Below are positions 42,857 through 50,452 of a stretch of 64,000 bases of DNA, one piece after another (the first letter of the stretch is position 1; each line of letters opens with the position of its first letter). Under the pieces are notes generated by a model. That model worked only from the letters and a program-made list of their open reading frames with translations, had not been told where the DNA came from and searched no databases. The stretch comes from Eutreptiella sp. 'Long Island Sound 2002' (lineage: Eukaryota; Protista; Euglenida). The stretch spans positions 193,130,001-193,194,000 of the forward strand of contig OZ038378.1 in NCBI GenBank assembly GCA_964036045.1, given 5' to 3'. The translations under genes and the position numbers were made by a program.

Positions 42857-45044
42857 GGTGAGGGGAAGGTGGCAGCCCAAGAAGCAGAGGGGCGGTGTCT
42901 GGATGGGGGGGGGGGGCTTCTGGCTCCGAGGGGGTGTCCAGGGATGCATTGGAAAGGGGGGACCCCCCCCTTCAGGGTCTGCAGCCTAGCGTCCGGCTGC
43001 TCTCTTCCTCTTTCTGCCCCTCCCCCCCCCCCGCTCACTATGGAGAGGAGCCCAGTACCTGGGATGTGCTTGTCCACGGGGGGTTGATCTGGAGGACCCC
43101 CCCCCCCAGGCCAAACCACCCACCACCCAAACCCAAAAGATTTCCCTGTGGGGTAAAAATGAAAATTTGAATGTAGAGCCAAACAGGAGAGGCCCGTTTT
43201 AGGTACACAAACTTTTTTTTGCACTCATTACCCCCCCCCCCCAGCCCCCTGTGTGACATTCCGTCTGGTTGTTGCTCCTTTACGGGGCCCTGGACAGTCA
43301 CCCGTTCTTCCCTTCGCATGTTGCGTCGGGTTGCTGCTTTCTGTCGGCCGCTGCGGCTGGTGCTCTTGCTGGTGTCGTTTCCGCGTTCGCGGAGCCCAGT
43401 AGTTGGTGTGTTGGGGCTGTGCTGAATGTGGCATGGCGTGCCGTTTGCGCGTCACCGGCGCCCAATAGTTGGCGTATTGAGGATGTGCTGGTTGTTGCCG
43501 GGGTCGTTTGACTGTTTTTGCTGTCCACGCGCCTCTGTCCAAAGGCCGTCTGTAGCCTGCCTCGCTGTGTTTCTGTGTGCGTGAGGCCCAGGTGCCCTGT
43601 TCCTCCACACGCTGTCCCAGCCGTCCACCATATGTCCTTTTCCCCCTCCACAGCTGGACTGCCCCTGATGGGCTCCCGTTCCTGTTGCGCAAACAGCCCA
43701 TATGGGCTGCGGAAGACACCCCCCACTTGATGCCGGTTGAGCAGGGGTTGCCCTGGCACCCAGTAGCGCCGGGGCTGGCTGGCCATCCCCTTTGTTGTCG
43801 CTGCCTCCCATGCGCATGCTCTGCCATCCGCTAACTTCTGGTTCCCTGTTCCCGCTGTTCTGGTTGCCTCTCTTGCCTTGCTGTGCCCCTCCTCCTTGTT
43901 TGTTGCGCCCGCCCTTGTCCCTCCTGGTGTGGCTCCCGCGTTCTGTGTGTCTGTGTTGCTCCTCCCCATGTCTATTGGCGCTCCTGGGTGCCCCTGTCGC
44001 GCAACCACTCCTGTCCCACCCGCCTACCCCCCTGTACGAGGGCTTCACATCTCCGTACGACGTGGACTGTCCCGTGCGCGATTGGCTGGTCACGGCCCTG
44101 TTGCCAACCCCGTGGCGGGCACCTCCCGGCGCGCGGGGCACAGTTCCCACCCTTGTGGAGTACGTGGGCACCTTGTAGAGGGAGGGGGGGGGGGGGTTGC
44201 CGATGGCTCGCTCGGCGTGCGCCGTATTCAGTGGTTGCTGCAGTGCTTGCACCTCATGGTTCCCTTGTGTATTGTTGCGTTTCCTGTTGGGGCTCGTCTC
44301 ATTGCCATGTGTGGGGCGGCTTTGTGCCTAGTTGCTTTGCTGCTTGCGTTCCTCCCAATTTCGGGCTCTTTCTTTTTCTCCTGGCACGCTCATTGCTGCT
44401 AGTGTGCGGCGCCGGGGGGGCAACATGTCGCTCCTTGCATCCCCTTGTGGCTGTCGGGTTGTCCCACTTGCAGTTGGGTGGTACCAGGGGCACCAGGCAC
44501 TTTTGCACATGTCTCCAAATTTACAAACTGACCTGTCACCGGTGTTTGTTGGGGTTGTTCTGGGGTGAATGTGGTGCATTGTTGCTCTTTTGCTTTCTGG
44601 GCTGCTAAGGGGCTCCCCGTTTGACGACTTCACTCCGGGTTGTCCACGCCTCGGAGCTAGGGACTCGTGTGAGTCCACCCCCTAGTTGGTCGTGTGCAGT
44701 GACCACCAATGGTTTGGACGTTGTGTCTCATAAGTGTGCCCAAGGGCCCTGCACTAGGCCCTGGTGATAGAACTTAGCTACTCGCGGGCAGTACATGTTT
44801 TAGGTCGCTGCCCAATGGACAACCGTGTAGCCGGCTACCAACCCCCCGGAGGGGTGACCCCCTTGCTGAGGTTTGGGTTGCCTTCTCCTCCCGTTGTGGC
44901 CGGGATGGTGATGGCTCCCGGGAGTGCATCAGGGAAGCATCCCTTCTATGTTGTGTGTAGGTGTGGCCTTGGTTGTTGCGTGTGTGGTGGGTGCCGTGTT
45001 GGCGTTGGGGCGTGGGGTCGTGGGCCCTTGGTGATGCTCCACGT

Positions 45045-45845
45045 GCGTGCCTTGTTTGTGGGCGGCGGTGGCTGTGCATGGGTGAAGTGCCCGTGTGGTG
45101 GGTCTGGCCCCCACCCTGGGTGTTGGGTGTTGGGCTGGTGTTGGTGCTTGCGGCGGGTGGTGTGGTTGTCCGCGGCTGTTGTTGTTGTACACTGTTGTTC
45201 TGTGTGTTGCGTGTTGTCGTGTGCTAGCGCGTTTCATTGTGTGCCTCTGCCGGCTTTGGTCTGCTGTGTTGCGTTGTGTGCTACGTTGCCTCCTCTTTGT
45301 GCGCTACACTGCCTCCGTGAGGCGTGGCAGCCGCGGCTAACCGCCCGTTGGGGCCGAGTTCGGGTAACCTCCGAAGCGCTTGGATAGGGCCGCCCACCCA
45401 TTGGCGGGGCCGAGTCTGAGCCCCCGGGGCCTACCTTTGAGGCTTGCGCGTGCCTTGTTTGTGGGCGGTGGTGGCTGTGCGTGGGTGAAGTGCCCGTGTG
45501 GTAGGTCTGGCCCCCACCCTGGGCATTGGGTGTTGGGCTGGTCCTGGTGCTTGCGGCACGTGGTGTGGTTGCCCGCCGCCATTGTTGTGGTACACCACTT
45601 TGCTTTGTTCTGCTATATTGTGCGCTACGTGCTTTCGTGTGCTGGCAAGTTTCGCTGTGTGCCTCTGCCGGCTCTGGTGTGCTGCGCTCTGTTGTGCGCG
45701 GCACTGCCTCAATGAGGCGTGGCGGCTGCGGCTACCCGGGCAAGGCCACTCTTCCCGTTGGGGCCGAGTCCGGGTCACCTCCGAAGTGCTTCGATAGGGC
45801 CACCCACCCATTGGTGGGACCGAATCCAAGTCCCGGGGCCTCCCT
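45045..45845. repeat. About 400-bp tandem duplication within the element
   Basis: GCGTGCCTTGTTTGTGGGCGG(C/T)GGTGGCTGTGC… at 45045 and 45448. Both copies end in CCCGTTGGGCCGAGT…CACCCATTGG…CCGGGGCC. Confidence 0.85.
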
Positions 45846-46477
45846 AAGAGGTTTGTGTGTTGTTCTCCTTTGTGCGCCTCTGTCAGCTTTGTGTGCTTGG
45901 GCGTTGTGCTGCCTTGTGCCGCTCTAATGTGCGTTGCGCTGCATTGTGCTGCATTCAGTTGGATCTGCGTGCCTGGGCGTTGTGCTGAACCCCTCAACGC
46001 CTCTCGGAGGCTGCCGCGATTAACTTCGCTAGGCGATAAGTGGGCAGCAATTTGCCCGTCTCTCCTAGTAGGTCCCCGTCTATGTGCACAGACGGTTGCC
46101 ACTCTCCATGTGTGTAGCACACCCCATGTGGGTGGCAGCTACACTGCGGGGTATACACACCAACGGCCACAATGCGCACTCGGACCACCGGCATCATGAG
46201 TCCTGGGGCATATGAGGCATCACACCTCACCCCTGGTCATGTTGAGCATCGGCGTGTAGGCCAGCTGCCACTCGCGGGCCCGTGCTATACTTGTATACTG
46301 TGCGTCCATGAAGCCCACGGTCACGTTTGCAAAGCGTCGTTGCATTGTCGGTGTGTTTGGTTCCCCTGGCCTTCTGCCCTCCTGTCTAGGGTCGTGTGTC
46401 GCAGCTCCCCTATTGCTGTGGCGTACCTCCCGTTGTTGGCGCCTGTCCCCTCTTTGTATGTCGGTGCCGTGCTGTCT

Positions 46478-46681
46478 TCAGGCCTCTGTGTCTAGCAGTC
46501 CGTCCTTTGCCTTCCGTGTTTGTTTGAATAGTCCCTCAGCCTTCTCCTTGTGGTGCGCGTTTTTGTCTGGGTGTGGCTTGACATTGAGCTGCTTGTATGC
46601 CCGCTTTATTTCCTCTGTTGTGGCCCCAGGGTACCGCACTCCGAGCACCTGGTACCGGTTCCCTGGCAGAGTGTCTGGCAT
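46478..46681 (-). pseudogene. DnaJ (J-domain) coding segment within the decayed element
   Basis: NRYQVLGVRYPGATTEEIKRAYKQLNVKPHPDKN…AEGLFKQ…AKDGLLD: canonical J-domain helices and HPD motif. Confidence 0.85.
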
Positions 46682-48799
46682 GTCCGCGACTGGGTTCTAT
46701 CCTCTGGTGTGTGGGACAGTTGGTTGGTTGGCCCCCGCTAGCTGGGGCTTGCGCTGGGGCTGTGGTTTGGGGGCCATGTTTGTCGTTGGCCTCTCCACTC
46801 AGACGACATTCGCTCTCTTTACGCGAATTTCCCGTCCTTGTGTGTGCCGTGGCCCCTTTGTTACGCGCACCTGCACTCTGAAGCCGTCATGCCCCACCAC
46901 CATGGCCTCACATGCGTTGAATTCCACCTGCCGCAGCCCTTGCAGATTCACTGCTGCTCCAGGAACAAAAGTTTGGCTCACAGGGCTGCGGAGGGCAAAA
47001 CTGAATGGAGCAGAAGGGAGCGTCCAAGGGGAGGATAATGGCCAGGTTCTAGTGCAACTAGACCACCAAAAGGGAGGCAGAACAGTGGCAGTCATCCACG
47101 ACACTTGAGCAGCCTGCCCCAAGGTAATGGCAGTAGTATGGGTTGTCGGGAGCAAGCTAGTAGCCCGCAAACAAGGAGAGCAGGAGCACAAAGGCATGAC
47201 AGGGCGCCGGTGACGCCACCTGCAGCAGCCCCCCATGTGGAGGCGGCCGTGTTAACATTGGTAGCAGGCGCAGCAGTAGTGGTGGTGGGTAGCGCAAGGC
47301 ACCTTGCGACGGGCTGCCACCTGTCTTGGGCCACCGCCTGCTCCCGGTTCTGTTTCATTATTGCTGCCCTTCGTTGTCTAGTGGCTTGGTCATGGCTCTT
47401 CTGCCACTTTTTGAGCCTGTGTACGAGCACCTGCGGGAGGTTGCACTCACAAAATAATGCCCCTATTTTTTCATTGATGCACCTATGCCCCCACAGATAC
47501 ATTGTTTGGCGTTGCGCACGTACTTCCCGGCGGTCTTCACGTCGTCTCCATAGAGTAGGCACTCCACACGTCCTTTTCCCGGCACTGTCCCCGCCGACAT
47601 AAAATCCGCCTTCCAGATGCGGCATTGCGCACACAACCACACCCCTAATTTTCCTCCATCTTCGCTCGGCGGTGCGCACTGCCTGTGGTCGCATGTGCCA
47701 CACCCATGACATGTGTATCGTGGTTCTGCCCCTGGTGCAGTGCATAATTTCACATCGCATCACCTTGTTTTGCCTTCTTTCTACGTCGTCTCCGGTGTTT
47801 GCTGAGTTTGCTGTGTCCCTTGCCTATGGCCCTCCTCTTGTGCTTCTGCTCACCCATCCTCTTTGATATTCTGCACAAGTATCTGTCCCTCCACTGTCCG
47901 GCCTGGGGTGTCCTCCATCTTTTCCAGCAAATTGCGCTTCATCCCTTGGCCCGTCTGTCGCGTCTCTTGTGGGTGCATTTCGTTCCACACTCTCGCCAGA
48001 GCGTGGAATAGGCACAGCCCATCTAGTGGCGTCTCGAAGATCGTCGTCGTCTCTGGGAGCTCATCTTCTAACTGCCCTGCGCCCTATCTCACCACGTTAC
48101 GCCGGCCTAGTGCCTGGCGCAGTTGCGATGCCACCCCCGGCGGTAGGATATTCCAAAAATTGCGTGCCCCATGTGCTGTCTCACCCAACACCTGCACACG
48201 GGGTGGCAGGCGTTGGGAGTGGTGGCAGGAACTGTGGTGGCTGCGGTGCTACGAGTCGTGTCCCGCATGGGATGGAACGCACAGGGGTTTCTATGGGGCA
48301 TGAGTCATACAACGTGAAATGGGTGCGGGGTGCAAGTTTCAGACACGACAAAGGAGGGGTTGCTGGTCCATGTGGTGGAGGGCACACCAAGTCAGGGGGA
48401 TGAACAAGCAGGCCGCATGCTAGAAGTACCATGAGGGGCGTTCTGGGGGTTGGGCCTTGAAGGGACGGCGCCAACACACACAGAGCAGACATTGCCCCGC
48501 CACCAGCCGGAGCACTCAAGGGAAGATAGCGAAGTGGTCCACAGGTCAGCAAATGAGACGTTGGTATGGGGTCTTCTGCGGCTGTTCACTATGGGGGTTT
48601 TGTTTCCCCTGGTGATCGGCTTGAAGCTGGGCCCTTGCCAACCAAGCCCGGGTGACTGTGCCTGCAATGGGTGTCTCTTTTGACCCCTGCCTTGTCTTTG
48701 CGCTTGCGGTGTGGCCCCGATTGCTGTAGTGCAGAGCGCTCTCGCTGTGTCTATTATTGTCCTGCACAATTTCATGTTGTTGTTGTTGTGCTTGCTGAT

Positions 48800-48997
48800 G
48801 GTGTTGATGTTTGATGATTCCTGCTCCTCCCAGTTCCATGCCTCCACGGTTGCTTGCTTCATTCTCTCTAATAATAGCTTCTGGTCAAAACATTGGTACA
48901 TAGCGGTGAAGTCTACCGTGCGTGCCGTGCTCCGTTGGGTGGCCACCTTTCGCGCTGCGAACCACAACAGTTGCGCCACCTCTTCTACTGATTCCAC
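48800..48997 (-). mobile_element. Fragment of a reverse transcriptase, probably Penelope-like
   Basis: RTVDFTAMYQCFDQKLLLERMKQATVEAW resembles the PLE-type RT motif-A (DFxxMY) region. No YxDD motif follows. Confidence 0.45.
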
Positions 48998-49361
48998 AAA
49001 CTAGCACCGCTTTGCATGCCCCTGCCTCCGTCGCACTGCGTCTTTTGCTTGTAGTGTGTGCATTACTGTAGACAGAACACCCACCAATTCGTCCCCCGCT
49101 CCAGCCAGGCTTCTCTGTGCGTCCCTGGGGTTTTCCTATTTGCTTTGCGCCCCCCCCCCCCCAGCCCCCCAGCCCCACCCCGTCCCGTAGGCCAAACACT
49201 AAGCACAACCCTGCCCAGTACTTAGACCACCGACGTTTATCGCACACGACTGCCCACAGCATCCGTCCACATGGGGTGCTCTTCCCACCTCAAAACTGTG
49301 GTGTGCGGCGCCCGATGCCTTGACAGCGCACGTGAGGGCCTGCACACCACCAAGACAGTAC

Positions 49362-49491
49362 CTGGGCCGCCTCCTTGTCCGCATCGTCCACACGGGGGAA
49401 CAGAATGCCGATTTCCTTCTCGTTGACGGGGAACTCCGTCATCTTGAGCCCGATCAGTTCCTCGATCTTCTGGATCTGCAGGACGTCATAC
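49362..49491 (-). CDS. DDX47: DDX47/RRP3, penultimate exon
   Basis: YDVLQIQKIEELIGLKMTEFPVNEKEIGILFPRVDDADKEAAQ resembles DDX47 YDVELFQRIEHLIGKKLPGFP…RV. Boundaries ctgcag| and |gtactg, phase 2 to 0. Confidence 0.9.
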
Positions 49492-50452
49492 CTGCAGCAG
49501 CGGGGCGAGGCAGAGGGGCAAAAATGATGGGCGCAGGTCGTTCGGTGGGACAACACCGGGTCCGGCCCACAGCCCGGCCCTGGGCTTGCGACCATTGCTT
49601 GGTCCAGGGGCAAGGGAGGTTCTTAGAGGGGGTTCAGCAAAGGGGGTGCTAATCCTGCGGCGCCTACGGTGCCTGCGGCGCGCAATTTGGGTAATTATCG
49701 TGGAACAGGAGAAATGGTACCCTTTGTGAAGCGTACTTTTGAATGGGGAGTGGTTATCGCAACACTTTCGTCCGTTTTGAGTATTATGCCTCGCAATTGT
49801 GCCCGTTTGACCTACTTCCTTCACCCAAAATTGAGGAAAGTCAATGCAGTGCTAATTGCCCTAAAGCTAATTGCCCTTACCCTGCGGCACTGCGACACAC
49901 AGTAAGCGCTCCCAAAGGTGCGGGGGGGTTGTACACATCAAAATGATCGCCGGAACGTGCTGATCATTCTGCGGCACACATATGGGCGGCGGAGTATCAA
50001 GTATCTGCGGTGGGATTAGGGTGCCCCGGCTGGTGGAGCACCCCATACCATGCAGACATTGAGTTTGCCCTCGAACCAAATGGAGGCGGCATGTCTCCAA
50101 GTTGCACAATCAATGAGCACATCGTAGTTTGGTAACCCCCATGAGCATGGCATGTCGATGATGTGCAACTCATTCCTGCAGTTGTACCTTTGCTATCATG
50201 TCATGCTCGCAACACATGTTTCTAGGATATGCAACTTGCTTTTTGTATTAAGCCACATCAAAGGACTTTTCGCGTTTAGGCTGGTGGTCCCCAACGGAAT
50301 CGCAAACATGCAACAAAACCTCCGGAGGAAATTGCAGCTCGGGTCACCGGCACCGATTTCAGAAGTCCACCTTTTCTCCCGATGAATGTTTTATCACGAT
50401 GCACTTTCCGTCAACGAGCAGGAGAGAGGGTTCTCCCTTTTTTGGTCCGGGG

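What the first reader, a model, noticed from the sequence alone, without database searches (positions are those of the whole stretch)
46000..48100. Retroelement-like polyprotein combining OTU protease, PHD finger, SH3-like domain, DnaJ co-chaperone and APE-like endonuclease motifs
Seen on the minus strand, in order over about 2.1 kb: IFETPLDGLCLFHALARVW (OTU catalytic D-G-x-C motif, absent from the ORF track); in the same frame CDVKLC…CHGCGTCDHRQC…WLCAQC (PHD); a Cys-rich CICGHRC…CEC stretch; VNLQGLRQVEFNACEAMVV…VQVRV…EIRVKRANV (SH3-like); in that frame a full J-domain with HPD; then VTVGFMDAQ…RGEV, IVAVGVYTPQ and VHIDGDL (APE-like). At least five stops and three frameshifts interrupt it. Established: PHD and APE occur in LINEs, cysteine proteases occur in some transposons, and J-domains recruit Hsp70 and are used by polyomavirus T antigens. 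I do not know of a J-domain as a standard LINE module. Inference: the parent element may carry its own deubiquitinase, histone reader and chaperone recruiter.
Basis: partly seen in the sequence, partly recalled or inferred. Interest (0 to 1): 0.82.

Follow-up and report, generated by a model that had tools for sequence, protein, structure and literature searches.

The report
Decayed Penelope-like retrotransposon with deubiquitinase and J-domain
This stretch is a broken, internally scrambled copy of a jumping gene present in hundreds of copies, whose single giant protein joins a reverse transcriptase to a rearranged ubiquitin-removing enzyme, zinc fingers, small barrel domains and a chaperone-recruiting J-domain.

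Summary
The quoted peptide strings are all present. They belong to one old copy of a retrotransposon family with at least 150 matches in this 2.28-Gb, probably euglenid, genome. The copy spans window 43245-49149 on the minus strand.

Intact copies read as a single frame of about 2,080 codons. The order is: GIY-YIG-like N-terminus, CxC/GxKF motifs, reverse transcriptase, CCCH finger, barrel, OTU-derived domain, two C4HC3 fingers, two KOW/Tudor-like barrels, J-domain, unknown Cys/His C-terminus. The reverse transcriptase lies upstream, not downstream.

- **Element type:** the motifs, 5' truncation, pseudo-LTR tail and poly-G flanks fit Naiad/Chlamys-type Penelope-like elements, not LINEs.
- **J-domain:** solid (50-61 bits).
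- **SH3-like call:** holds at fold level (Z 10.3 to Spt5 KOW).
- **PHD call:** below threshold.
- **APE call:** fails.
- **OTU call:** real but unusual. The His half precedes the Cys half, an apparent circular permutation. Sister elements keep the canonical order.

Both OTU halves, the J-domain and the C-terminus show dN/dS of 0.2-0.4. The scan earlier reported a sister family (JAMM plus J-domain) on other DNA (s1-192976).

The parts
49150..49175 (.). G-run (minus strand) flanking the 5'-truncated end of the copy
   Evidence: Read directly. The match to full-length copies starts at 49149.
48818..49149 (-). Fragment of the reverse transcriptase, up to and including motif A (TVDFTAMYQCFD at 48884-48919). 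About 1.6 kb is deleted after it (RT motifs B-E, thumb, CCCH finger).
   Evidence: blastn against natural full-length copies L057 and L059; motif position.
48560..48808 (-). Q/H-rich linker of the polyprotein
   Evidence: Collinear match to L057/L059.
48184..48559 (+). Segment inverted relative to all other copies. It encodes the linker and the start of the first barrel region on the + strand (48189-48314).
   Evidence: Opposite-strand match to L057/L059; peptide located.
48087..48186 (-). Remnant of the OTU His strand (intact copies read APHFWN, here ARNFWN at 48138-48161). The preceding 'GGWPEIV...' helix is lost in a deletion of about 170 bp.
   Evidence: compared with the intact copies.
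47853..48083 (-). OTU Cys-loop and helical arm (DGLCLFHA at 48000-48023)
   Evidence: Custom OTU profile 13.1 bits. The equivalent part of an intact copy gives hhalign probability 85.7%. Pfam OTU 15.8 bits, below threshold, on the intact copy.
47443..47759 (-). Two C4HC3 (PHD-like) zinc fingers; the second is split by a frameshift
   Evidence: Pfam PHD 17.4 bits against cutoff 24; PHD 16.3 and C1_2 17.2 bits on the intact copy; Cys/His spacing read directly.
46959..47313 (+). Second inverted segment. It carries barrel 1 (PGTKVWL...VIHDT at 46959-47105) on the + strand.
   Evidence: Every other scored copy that spans this segment has it in the opposite orientation.
46805..46951 (-).
   Evidence: AF2 model of the intact copy, pLDDT about 95. 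Best structural match is DSIF KOW6-7, 5ohq_A, Z 10.3, rmsd 1.3 A over 58 residues.
46481..46654 (-). J-domain (HPD at 46565-46573)
   Evidence: PF00226 50.1 bits in the window, 61.2 bits in the intact copy; pLDDT about 96 and J-domain matches at Z about 9.7.
45994..46345 (-). The stop codon of the polyprotein is at 45994-45996.
   Evidence: No Pfam or Atlas hit; AF2 pLDDT about 45; conserved in the distant fragment P0062; dN/dS 0.19-0.38.
45042..45845 (-). 3' UTR holding two copies of a direct repeat of about 400-418 bp
   Evidence: the repeat finder, 75-87% identity between copies.
43245..44228 (-). 3' tail of the element. The same sequence sits immediately upstream of full-length copies elsewhere, where it forms a pseudo-LTR.
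   Evidence: blastn against L058 and L059 upstream regions, 90-91% identity.
43229..43250 (.). G-run (minus strand) at the 3' end of the copy
   Evidence: Read directly.

Best explanation
Window 43245-49149 (minus strand) is an old, dead copy of an element of about 9.5 kb. The copy is 5'-truncated, has two deletions and two inversions, and differs by about 10% from the young subfamily. The genome is probably that of a euglenid alga.

In intact copies one frame of about 2,080 codons encodes, in order:
1. a GIY-YIG-like N-terminal region
2. CxC and GxKF motifs
3. a divergent reverse transcriptase with a DKG-like motif and a long insertion between motifs A and B
4. a CCCH finger
5. a barrel
6. 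an OTU-derived domain whose His half precedes its Cys half
7. two C4HC3 fingers
8. two KOW/Tudor-like barrels
9. a J-domain
10. a Cys/His C-terminal domain

Inferred mechanism. The element copies itself by target-primed reverse transcription into (C)n/(G)n runs, as Chlamys-type Penelope-like elements do. The C-terminal extension would act on the host. The OTU module would strip ubiquitin or a ubiquitin-like tag from the element's own protein or from chromatin. The J-domain would recruit host Hsp70 to fold or assemble the giant RNP. The fingers and barrels would tether it to chromatin or nucleic acid.

What is shown: the architecture, the copy number, the J-domain, the barrel fold, and purifying selection on the modules. 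What is inferred: any enzymatic activity, the endonuclease, and the roles of the modules.

Sub-confidences: multi-copy retroelement with RT upstream and a real J-domain 0.95; Penelope-like class 0.7; permuted OTU fold 0.6; catalytically active OTU 0.4.
For: **Copy number and single frame**
- The DNA search gave 118 matches out of 415 candidates, at 86-91% identity.
- The OTU-region protein search gave 153 matches.
- Intact frames: 1091 aa (L024), 1428 aa (L025), and 614+1466 aa separated by one stop (L057).

**RT lies upstream**
- Motifs TVDF..., GFGMGL...QLANL and RFIDD are present. Pfam RVT_1 scores 16-21 bits.

**Penelope-like features, as listed by Craig et al. 2021 (PMC8557442)**
- CxC (SCECF...GHVC), GxKF (KGHKFK) and DKG-like (KEDRGP) motifs are conserved across 12 relatives.
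- About 92 residues separate motif A from the stretch that Pfam aligns to RVT_1 positions 111-160.
- Copies are 5'-truncated.
- The 3' tail recurs upstream of full-length copies, and L058 has an adjacent inverted copy.
- Internal repeats of about 400 bp lie in the 3' UTR.
- G-runs sit at both ends of the window copy.
- No hammerhead ribozyme or other Rfam family is found.

**OTU**
- Sisters P0154 and P0153 carry a canonical OTU scoring 35.4 and 24.2 bits, above the 23.3 cutoff, followed by DnaJ.
- A profile built from sister OTU domains scores 24.2 bits on intact copies, against at most 8.1 bits in 2000 shuffles. It hits in two parts in reversed order: profile positions 75-112 align to residues 285-325, and positions 12-75 align to residues 397-465.
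- hhalign gives 85.7% probability for the Cys half and 16.7% for the WGG half.
- In the structure search about 20 of the top 30 hits are His-before-Cys ubiquitin/ubiquitin-like isopeptidases. Among the top hits is EschOTU (6w9s_A, Z 4.4), which Schubert et al. 2020 describe as the only OTU with this arrangement.
- The two-half order persists in decayed copies down to about 48-62% identity.

**Selection**
- dN/dS is 0.22-0.35 for the OTU halves, 0.16-0.33 for the J-domain and 0.19-0.38 for the C-terminus. An internal linker used as control gives 0.91-0.95.

**RNA**
- Contigs from four estuary metatranscriptome libraries lie on the element. The longest is 840 nt at about 98% identity.
- A sister family is represented by a Euglena gracilis transcript.
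Against: **Class assignment**
- The RT is very divergent. It stays below Pfam's cutoff, and a profile of it finds no solved structure.
- I could not place it in a tree with reference Penelope-like, telomerase and LINE reverse transcriptases. The class call therefore rests on motifs and insertion structure.

**Endonuclease**
- The GIY-YIG-like N-terminus has no hit in Pfam, NCBIfam, PHROGs or a profile search of PDB sequences.

**OTU**
- The family's own OTU region fails Pfam's cutoff (15.8 against 23.3 bits).
- The WGG/His half is supported only weakly.
- The residue two places after the His is Trp rather than Asp/Asn/Glu.
- The AF2 model is poor over residues 41-116 (pLDDT below 50).
- All structural Z-scores are below 5.
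- Foldseek and the Atlas shape search found nothing.

**Other limits**
- The pooled pairwise dN/dS values are not independent and carry no significance test.
- Contigs in RNA libraries do not prove transcription.
- The start codon was not identified.
Confidence: 0.8

Rival explanations
1. It is a LINE (non-LTR retrotransposon) whose APE endonuclease lies at the end of the described region and whose RT follows downstream.
Against: - No Exo_endo_phos signal at E up to 10 in the window or in intact copies.
- The region is about 110 aa and ends at the polyprotein's stop codon.
- Only a 3' UTR with repeats follows it.
- The RT lies upstream.
Confidence: 0.02
2. The modules come from separately inserted elements, or from a single-copy host pseudogene, that happen to lie side by side.
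For: The window copy itself is fragmented, changes frame and has inverted pieces.
Against: Dozens of copies keep the same order. Several natural copies read through all the modules in one open frame.
Confidence: 0.02
3. The element is real, but its OTU-like stretches are only relics. The Cys-loop fragment was retained for a non-catalytic role such as ubiquitin binding, and the upstream 'WGG...His' resemblance is chance. On this reading there is no permuted protease fold.
For: - The WGG half is weak: i-E 0.15 in HMMER and 16.7% in hhalign.
- The acid position of the catalytic triad is Trp.
- The AF2 model is poor over that half.
- Structural Z-scores are below 5.
- Foldseek and the Atlas shape search are blank.
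Against: - Both stretches match the profile in the order a permutation predicts.
- The total score is three times the best of 2000 shuffles.
- Both halves are under similar constraint, dN/dS about 0.2-0.35.
- The order is kept in diverged copies.
- The weak fold hits are strongly enriched for His-before-Cys isopeptidases and include EschOTU.
- An engineered permuted OTU is known to stay folded and active (PMC7396840).
Confidence: 0.3
4. The element belongs to a retroelement class of its own, or to another known class, and only resembles Penelope-like elements in a few short motifs.
For: - The RT is below threshold in Pfam.
- Two protein searches found only 12-18 relatives, all of the same clade.
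- GIY-YIG is not detectable by any profile.
Against: Several independent diagnostic features coincide. The CxC, GxKF and DKG-like motifs occur in the right order. There is an insertion between motifs A and B. Pseudo-LTR tails, 5' truncation and an adjacent inverted copy are seen. Internal repeats and homopolymer-run flanks are present.
Confidence: 0.15

Closest known systems
Chlamys/Naiad N-terminal-endonuclease Penelope-like elements (Craig et al. 2021, PMC8557442)
   Same: - Single long ORF
- CxC then GxKF/Y motifs ahead of the RT
- A modified DKG motif
- Extra residues between RT motifs A and B
- Frequent 5' truncation, pseudo-LTRs from partial tandems, adjacent inverted copies
- Internal tandem repeats
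- Insertion at (C)n runs
- No canonical hammerhead ribozyme
- One Chara family (Chlamys-1_cBra) already has a C-terminal extension with a weak Josephin-like cysteine protease motif and an unknown Cys/His motif
   Different: - About 9.5 kb, against 3.3-8.2 kb for described Chlamys elements
- The host is a euglenid, a group not named in that paper
- The GIY-YIG domain is not detectable by profiles
- The C-terminal extension exceeds 1,300 aa and holds OTU, fingers, barrels and a J-domain, none of which that paper mentions ('OTU' and 'DnaJ' each occur 0 times in it)
EschOTU of Escherichia albertii (Schubert et al. 2020, PMC7396840; PDB 6w9s)
   Same: - An OTU fold threaded His-aromatic...Cys instead of Cys...His
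[quoted passage not shown]
- It is among the top three structural matches to the model
   Different: - EschOTU is a bacterial effector, and the Z-score is only 4.4
- In EschOTU the acid residue sits two places after the His; here that place is Trp
- Activity is untested here
- This permutation arose inside a eukaryotic retrotransposon whose sisters keep the canonical order
Sister retroelement proteins P0154, P0153, P0158, P0094 and Euglena gracilis transcript EG_transcript_489 (P0161)
   Same: - 49-55% identical RT region
- Same N-terminal motifs and a CCCH finger after the thumb
- P0154, P0153, P0158 and P0094 follow this with OTU and then a J-domain
   Different: - Their OTU has the canonical Cys...WGG...His order, starts about 240 aa after the FIDD motif, and passes Pfam in some of them
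- They lack the extra barrels, the PHD-like pair and the C-terminal domain of this family
Earlier scan finding s1-192976 (Penelope-like element with JAMM deubiquitinase, PHD, 2xKOW, DnaJ in the same genome)
   Same: Same genome and same overall design: RT followed by a ubiquitin protease, fingers, KOW barrels and a J-domain. Possibly it is the family at 42% RT identity seen.
   Different: It has a different protease class (a JAMM metalloprotease, against an OTU cysteine protease here). I did not examine that element myself.
Dualen/RandI non-LTR elements with a Josephin-like protease (as cited in PMC8557442)
   Same: A retrotransposon polyprotein that carries a deubiquitinase-type cysteine protease.
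   Different: A different retroelement class (dual-endonuclease LINE), a different protease family and no J-domain. This comparison rests on the paper's statement, not on a test here.

Membership tests
Penelope-like elements, N-terminal EN+ clade (Naiad/Chlamys) | CxC motif followed by a GxKF/Y motif between the endonuclease and the RT | tested here: met
   SCECF...GHVC, then KGHKFK. The CxC and KGH(A/K)(F/Y)K motifs are conserved in the relatives whose sequence covers that region. The feature list is from PMC8557442.
Penelope-like elements, N-terminal EN+ clade (Naiad/Chlamys) | DKG motif ahead of the RT core (DKA in Naiads, DK+x in Chlamys) | tested here: inconclusive
   The conserved block is LKEDR(G/A)PH, invariant E-D-R. 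It has the same position and context, but Arg replaces Lys.
Penelope-like elements, N-terminal EN+ clade (Naiad/Chlamys) | Insertion between RT motifs A and B (IFD-like) | tested here: met
   About 92 residues lie between the motif-A Asp and the stretch aligned to RVT_1 profile positions 111-160. By my estimate that is several tens of residues more than the profile spacing. Homology to the telomerase IFD was not tested.
Penelope-like elements, N-terminal EN+ clade (Naiad/Chlamys) | N-terminal GIY-YIG endonuclease | tested here: inconclusive
   A GYV...GKTYAG...AR.K.RW...WPVERFPG.RRGH...G(L/F)N pattern is conserved at 44% identity in a second family. Pfam, NCBIfam, PHROGs and a profile search of PDB sequences give no hit.
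Penelope-like elements, N-terminal EN+ clade (Naiad/Chlamys) | 5' truncation, pseudo-LTRs from partial tandems, adjacent inverted copies | tested here: met
   Most copies are 5'-truncated. The 3' tail (window 43245-44228) precedes the body in L058 and L059, and L058 carries an inverted partial copy.
Penelope-like elements, N-terminal EN+ clade (Naiad/Chlamys) | Insertion into microsatellite or homopolymer runs ((CA)n, (C)n) | tested here: met
   G-runs abut both ends of the window copy. Only this one insertion was examined at both ends.
Penelope-like elements, N-terminal EN+ clade (Naiad/Chlamys) | RT groups with Penelope-like/telomerase RTs in a phylogeny | not testable with these tools
   No reference Penelope-like RT sequences could be obtained. 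A profile search of PDB sequences was blank.
OTU cysteine protease (PF02338) | Pfam gathering score | tested here: not met
   15.8 bits against 23.3 on the intact copy and no hit on the window pieces. Sisters P0154 and P0153 pass, with 35.4 and 24.2 bits.
OTU cysteine protease (PF02338) | Catalytic Cys in a D-G-x-C-L-F motif, and a general-base His | tested here: met
   Intact copies have DGLCLFHA and APHF. In the window copy the Cys motif is kept but the His is replaced by Asn.
OTU cysteine protease (PF02338) | Acid residue two places after the His (H-aromatic-D/N/E) | tested here: not met
   The sequence reads H-F-W-N. The rule is taken from PMC7396840.
OTU cysteine protease (PF02338) | Cys...His order along the chain | tested here: not met
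   The order is reversed. According to PMC7396840 this arrangement is observed only in EschOTU.
DnaJ J-domain (PF00226) | Pfam gathering score, HPD motif, helical hairpin fold | tested here: met
   50.1 bits in the window and 61.2 bits in the intact copy, against a cutoff of 27.8. HPD is at 46565-46573. pLDDT is about 96, with J-domain matches at Z about 9.7.
PHD finger (PF00628) | C4HC3 spacing and Pfam gathering score | tested here: inconclusive
   C-x4-C-x11-C-x2-C-x4-H-x2-C-x15-C-x2-C, with Trp before the last pair, read directly. Scores are 17.4 and 16.3 bits against a cutoff of 24.
KOW / SH3-like small barrel | Five-stranded SH3-like barrel fold | tested here: met
   Model residues 21-82 have pLDDT about 95. 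The best match is 5ohq_A, Z 10.3, rmsd 1.3 A over 58 residues, followed by NusG/Spt5 KOW, Tudor and PWWP domains. At sequence level the KOW hit is only E 0.11.
APE-type endonuclease (Exo_endo_phos, PF03372) | Profile match and a catalytic domain of about 230 aa | tested here: not met
   No hit at E up to 10 or in whole intact frames. The region is about 110 aa.
LINE / non-LTR retrotransposon | APE or restriction-like endonuclease with the RT downstream of ORF1/EN, and a simple 3' tail | tested here: not met
   The RT precedes all the modules. A 3' UTR of about 2.75 kb ends in a pseudo-LTR-forming tail.

The most novel reading that the evidence does not exclude
A clade of Penelope-like retrotransposons, probably euglenid, routinely carries a deubiquitinase plus an Hsp70-recruiting J-domain in its polyprotein. 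One abundant family within it has naturally circularly permuted its OTU domain into His-before-Cys order and kept it under purifying selection. This would be the second natural case of that topology after the bacterial effector EschOTU, and the first in a eukaryotic mobile element.
Probability: 0.45. Interest if true: 0.75.

Novelty: new variant of a known kind. Interest (0 to 1): 0.6.

Why it matters
Penelope-like elements are the retrotransposons closest to telomerase, and how they deal with the host cell is largely unknown.

A family that carries its own ubiquitin-removing module and its own Hsp70 recruiter points to two host systems the element has to manage: protein degradation or ubiquitin marks, and chaperone-assisted RNP assembly. 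Both ideas can be tested with purified domains. Hsp70/Hsp90 chaperones are known, from my own knowledge rather than from a test here, to assist telomerase and hepadnaviral reverse transcriptases. A built-in J-domain is therefore a plausible shortcut.

The apparent OTU permutation offers a natural eukaryotic counterpart to the single bacterial example. It also warns that profile searches miss such domains.

For annotation, the result shows that this recurrent 'OTU-PHD-SH3-DnaJ' cassette, noted several times in this genome, is transposon debris and not a host gene.

Tried and rejected
- **OTU model, structure searches.** Foldseek against PDB found nothing at E up to 0.001. The Atlas shape search gave TM at most 0.32, with unrelated families.
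- **Language-model Atlas look-ups.** No usable hit for the C-terminal domain or for the two barrels.
- **C-terminal domain.** AF2 pLDDT is about 45, so no fold can be named.
- **Barrels by sequence against PDB.** Only chance-level rows.
- **GIY-YIG.** Pfam, NCBIfam, PHROGs and a profile search of PDB sequences were all blank.
- **RT profile against PDB sequences.** Blank.
- **Protein searches.** Single-sequence and alignment queries returned only 4, 18 and 12 relatives, all from this clade. No bridge to named Penelope-like proteins was found.
- **Representative-library search.** It returned mostly short fragments of this family plus generic J-domain proteins.
- **Discarded alignments.** A2-A4 were discarded because MAFFT placed the halves of canonical OTU domains wrongly. 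A5 was used instead.
- **Tandem Repeats Finder.** Nothing found, because the repeat unit is about 400 bp in only two copies.
- **Rfam.** No family in the window.
- **Genome-letter allowance.** The diverged copies at 42-70% identity, which would have deepened the OTU alignment, could not be fetched.
- **No consensus.** All comparisons used natural copies.


Full report
**1. The observation**

Their exact positions were recovered by script.

- Pfam gives a clear DnaJ hit on the stop-to-stop piece 46481-46696 (50.1 bits, E 3e-13).
- The PHD hit is below threshold (17.4 bits against a cutoff of 24).
- Nothing is found for OTU or for an APE-type endonuclease.
- The interruptions by stops and frameshifts are real.

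**2. It is a repeat, and intact copies exist**

A DNA search of the window's own genome (2.28 Gb, 2317 contigs) found 118 matches among 415 candidates, at 86-91% identity. Every other scored copy that spans window 46959-47313 has that segment in the opposite orientation.

Several natural copies read through the whole region in one frame: 1091 codons in L024, 1428 in L025 and 887 in L026. One copy has 614+1466 codons separated by a single stop (L057). The frame ends at the equivalent of window 45994-45996. Nothing coding follows it.

It has the motifs TVDF..., GFGMGL...QLANL and RFIDD, and Pfam RVT_1 scores 16-21 bits, below cutoff. A CCCH finger follows the RT. So the RT is upstream of the modules, not downstream.

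**3. Anatomy of the window copy**

blastn against the natural copies L057, L058 and L059 gives the following, read along the minus strand:

| Window coordinates | Content |
|---|---|
| 49149-48818 | RT up to motif A |
| (deletion, about 1.6 kb) | rest of the RT, thumb and CCCH finger |
| 48808-48560 | linker |
| 48184-48559 | inverted segment |
| (deletion, about 170 bp) | the 'GGWPEIV' helix of the OTU region |
| 48186-47312 | OTU His-strand remnant, OTU Cys half, fingers |
| 46959-47313 | inverted segment with a barrel domain readable on the + strand |
| 46969-45027 | barrel 2, J-domain, C-terminal domain, 3' UTR |
| 44228-43245 | 3' tail |

The 3' UTR contains two units of a direct repeat of about 400-418 bp. 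The tail sequence also sits directly upstream of the body of full-length copies in L058 and L059, where it forms a pseudo-LTR. G-runs abut both ends of the window copy.

**4. What class of element**

Craig et al. 2021 (PMC8557442) list the diagnostic features of N-terminal-endonuclease Penelope-like elements (Naiad/Chlamys):

- CxC then GxKF/Y motifs
- a modified DKG motif
- an insertion between RT motifs A and B
- heavy 5' truncation
- pseudo-LTRs from partial tandems, and adjacent inverted copies
- internal tandem repeats
- (CA)n or (C)n targets
- no canonical hammerhead ribozyme

An alignment of this family with 11 relatives shows SCECF...GHVC, KGH(K/A)(F/Y)K, LKEDR(G/A)PH and PYIYGIWKSAKR.LRWISG. 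The last block resembles the RT1/2 block of Penelope-like elements as I recall it, which is memory and not a test. About 92 residues lie between the motif-A Asp and the motif-B region.

The insertion features are met, as described in section 3. Rfam finds nothing in the window.

The N-terminal region has a GIY-YIG-like pattern conserved at 44% identity in a second family. No profile library recognises it.

I could not obtain reference RTs for a tree. The class call is therefore motif- and structure-based, and I put it at about 0.7.

**5. The OTU question**

Length-matched protein searches found sister proteins from other assemblies and from a Euglena gracilis transcriptome (P0161 is EG_transcript_489). 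Nearly all of them have DGxC about 240 residues after the FIDD motif. Most of those long enough also have HPD a further 230-450 residues on.

P0154 and P0153 pass Pfam for OTU (35.4 and 24.2 bits) and for DnaJ. Their OTU domains are canonical: GDGSCLF... then WGGE.EL... then HYD.

In the present family the 'YGGWPEIVIFAQL...VHIGVY...APHF' stretch comes first, and 'DGLCLFHA' plus the helical arm come about 100 residues later.

- **Profile test.** A profile built from the sisters' OTU domains scores 24.2 bits on intact copies, against at most 8.1 bits in 2000 shuffles. It hits in two pieces in swapped order.
- **hhalign.** It gives 85.7% probability for the Cys half and 16.7% for the other half.
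- **AF2 model.** Mean pLDDT is 65.9 and pTM 0.60. The model is poor over residues 41-116.
- **Order-dependent structure searches.** Foldseek finds no match and the Atlas shape search finds nothing.
- **Exhaustive aligner.** All scores are weak (Z at most 4.7), but the list is dominated by His-before-Cys ubiquitin-like proteases such as NEDP1, Ulp1, the SENPs, ChlaDUB and XopD. EschOTU ranks third (6w9s_A, Z 4.4, 118 residues).

Schubert et al. 2020 (PMC7396840) report that the permuted H-aromatic-N...C order is observed only in EschOTU. They also show that an engineered permuted viral OTU stays folded and active.

Caveats:
- The residue two places after the His is Trp.
- All structural Z-scores are low.
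- The window copy has lost the His.

I rate 'permuted OTU-derived fold' at about 0.6 and 'catalytically active' at about 0.4.

**6. The other modules**

- **J-domain.** 61.2 bits in intact copies, pLDDT about 96, and Z about 9.7 to solved J-domains.
- **Barrel 2.** Its best match is DSIF KOW6-7 (Z 10.3, rmsd 1.3 A over 58 residues), followed by NusG/Spt5 KOW, Tudor and PWWP domains.
- **Further barrels.** Two more stretches have similar sequence patterns, so they are probably barrels as well. They were not modelled.
- **Cys-rich stretches.** Both show C4HC3 spacing, but they stay below threshold for PHD and C1.
- **C-terminal domain.** It has a CSCHPHGVCYTH cluster and is conserved in the distant fragment P0062. 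It has no profile or Atlas match and a low-confidence model. The APE reading is not supported.

**7. Selection and expression**

I ran Nei-Gojobori comparisons on natural copies only, pooled over pairs, with no consensus built.

| Region | dN/dS between subfamilies | dN/dS within the young subfamily |
|---|---|---|
| OTU His half | 0.35 | 0.29 |
| OTU Cys half | 0.33 | 0.22 |
| Fingers | 0.48 | 0.29 |
| Barrel 1 | 0.53 | 0.52 |
| Barrel 2 | 0.65 | 0.56 |
| J-domain | 0.33 | 0.16 |
| C-terminal domain | 0.38 | 0.19 |
| Low-complexity linker (control) | 0.95 | 0.91 |

The pairs are not independent, so this is qualitative.

Four estuary metatranscriptome libraries hold contigs on the element. The longest is 840 nt at about 98% identity, and coverage is richer toward the 3' end. 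DNA carry-over cannot be excluded.

**8. Literature and earlier notes**

In the held library I found no paper describing an OTU or a J-domain in a Penelope-like element. PMC8557442 does describe a weak Josephin-like motif and an unknown Cys/His motif in the C-terminal extension of a Chara Chlamys family, and it cites Josephin-like domains in Dualen LINEs.

The scan itself had already reported a sister design on other DNA of this genome (s1-192976: JAMM, PHD, 2xKOW, DnaJ). First readers had also flagged two other copies of the present cassette (s1-219480, s1-216593). I used these as leads only.

**9. Verdict**

The window holds an ordinary dead copy of an unusual retrotransposon family. What is interesting belongs to the family, not to this copy: a Penelope-like polyprotein with a deubiquitinase and chaperone-recruiter extension, and an apparently permuted OTU.

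Noticed in passing
window 46959-47313 and 48184-48559: Two short segments (355 and 376 bp) of this one copy are inverted in place relative to all other copies examined. The junctions overlap by 2-11 bp. Another old copy (C3:182160890-182162026) also shows a locally inverted piece. I could not tell real rearrangement from assembly error.
   Followed up: partly
window 49293-49499 (minus strand): A 69-codon open stretch just upstream of the element ends at a 'cag|gtactg' that looks like a splice donor. The insertion may therefore lie in an intron of a host gene. Pfam gives no hit for the stretch.
   Followed up: partly
L024:542-1000 and L024:2279-2887 (G000:C13:44909500-44919499): The intact copy used as reference sits right after two exon-like stretches of an NAD-dependent epimerase/dehydratase gene (PF01370 at 47 and 58 bits).
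   Followed up: no
L055, L056 and many places listed (e.g. G000:C8:50059412-50060101): A second, very abundant family shares 42% identity in the RT region, has open frames up to 2790 codons, and keeps the same GIY-YIG-like N-terminal pattern. It may be the JAMM-carrying family of s1-192976.
   Followed up: no
L058 (G000:C24:3420000-3429999): The 5' half of a full-length copy is joined to an inverted 3' half of another copy, and the frame stays open for about 395 codons back into the pseudo-LTR. No start codon could be assigned near the start of the element body.
   Followed up: partly
P0163: A sister RT-OTU protein is deposited as a 'hypothetical protein' of the carnivorous plant Genlisea aurea. 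This may be contamination from trapped protists. I did not check it.
   Followed up: no
L025:8900-10000: Long triplet-type simple repeats, translating as poly-Ser, poly-Ala, poly-Leu or poly-Cys runs depending on frame, lie about 1.5 kb beyond the 5' side of that copy.
   Followed up: no
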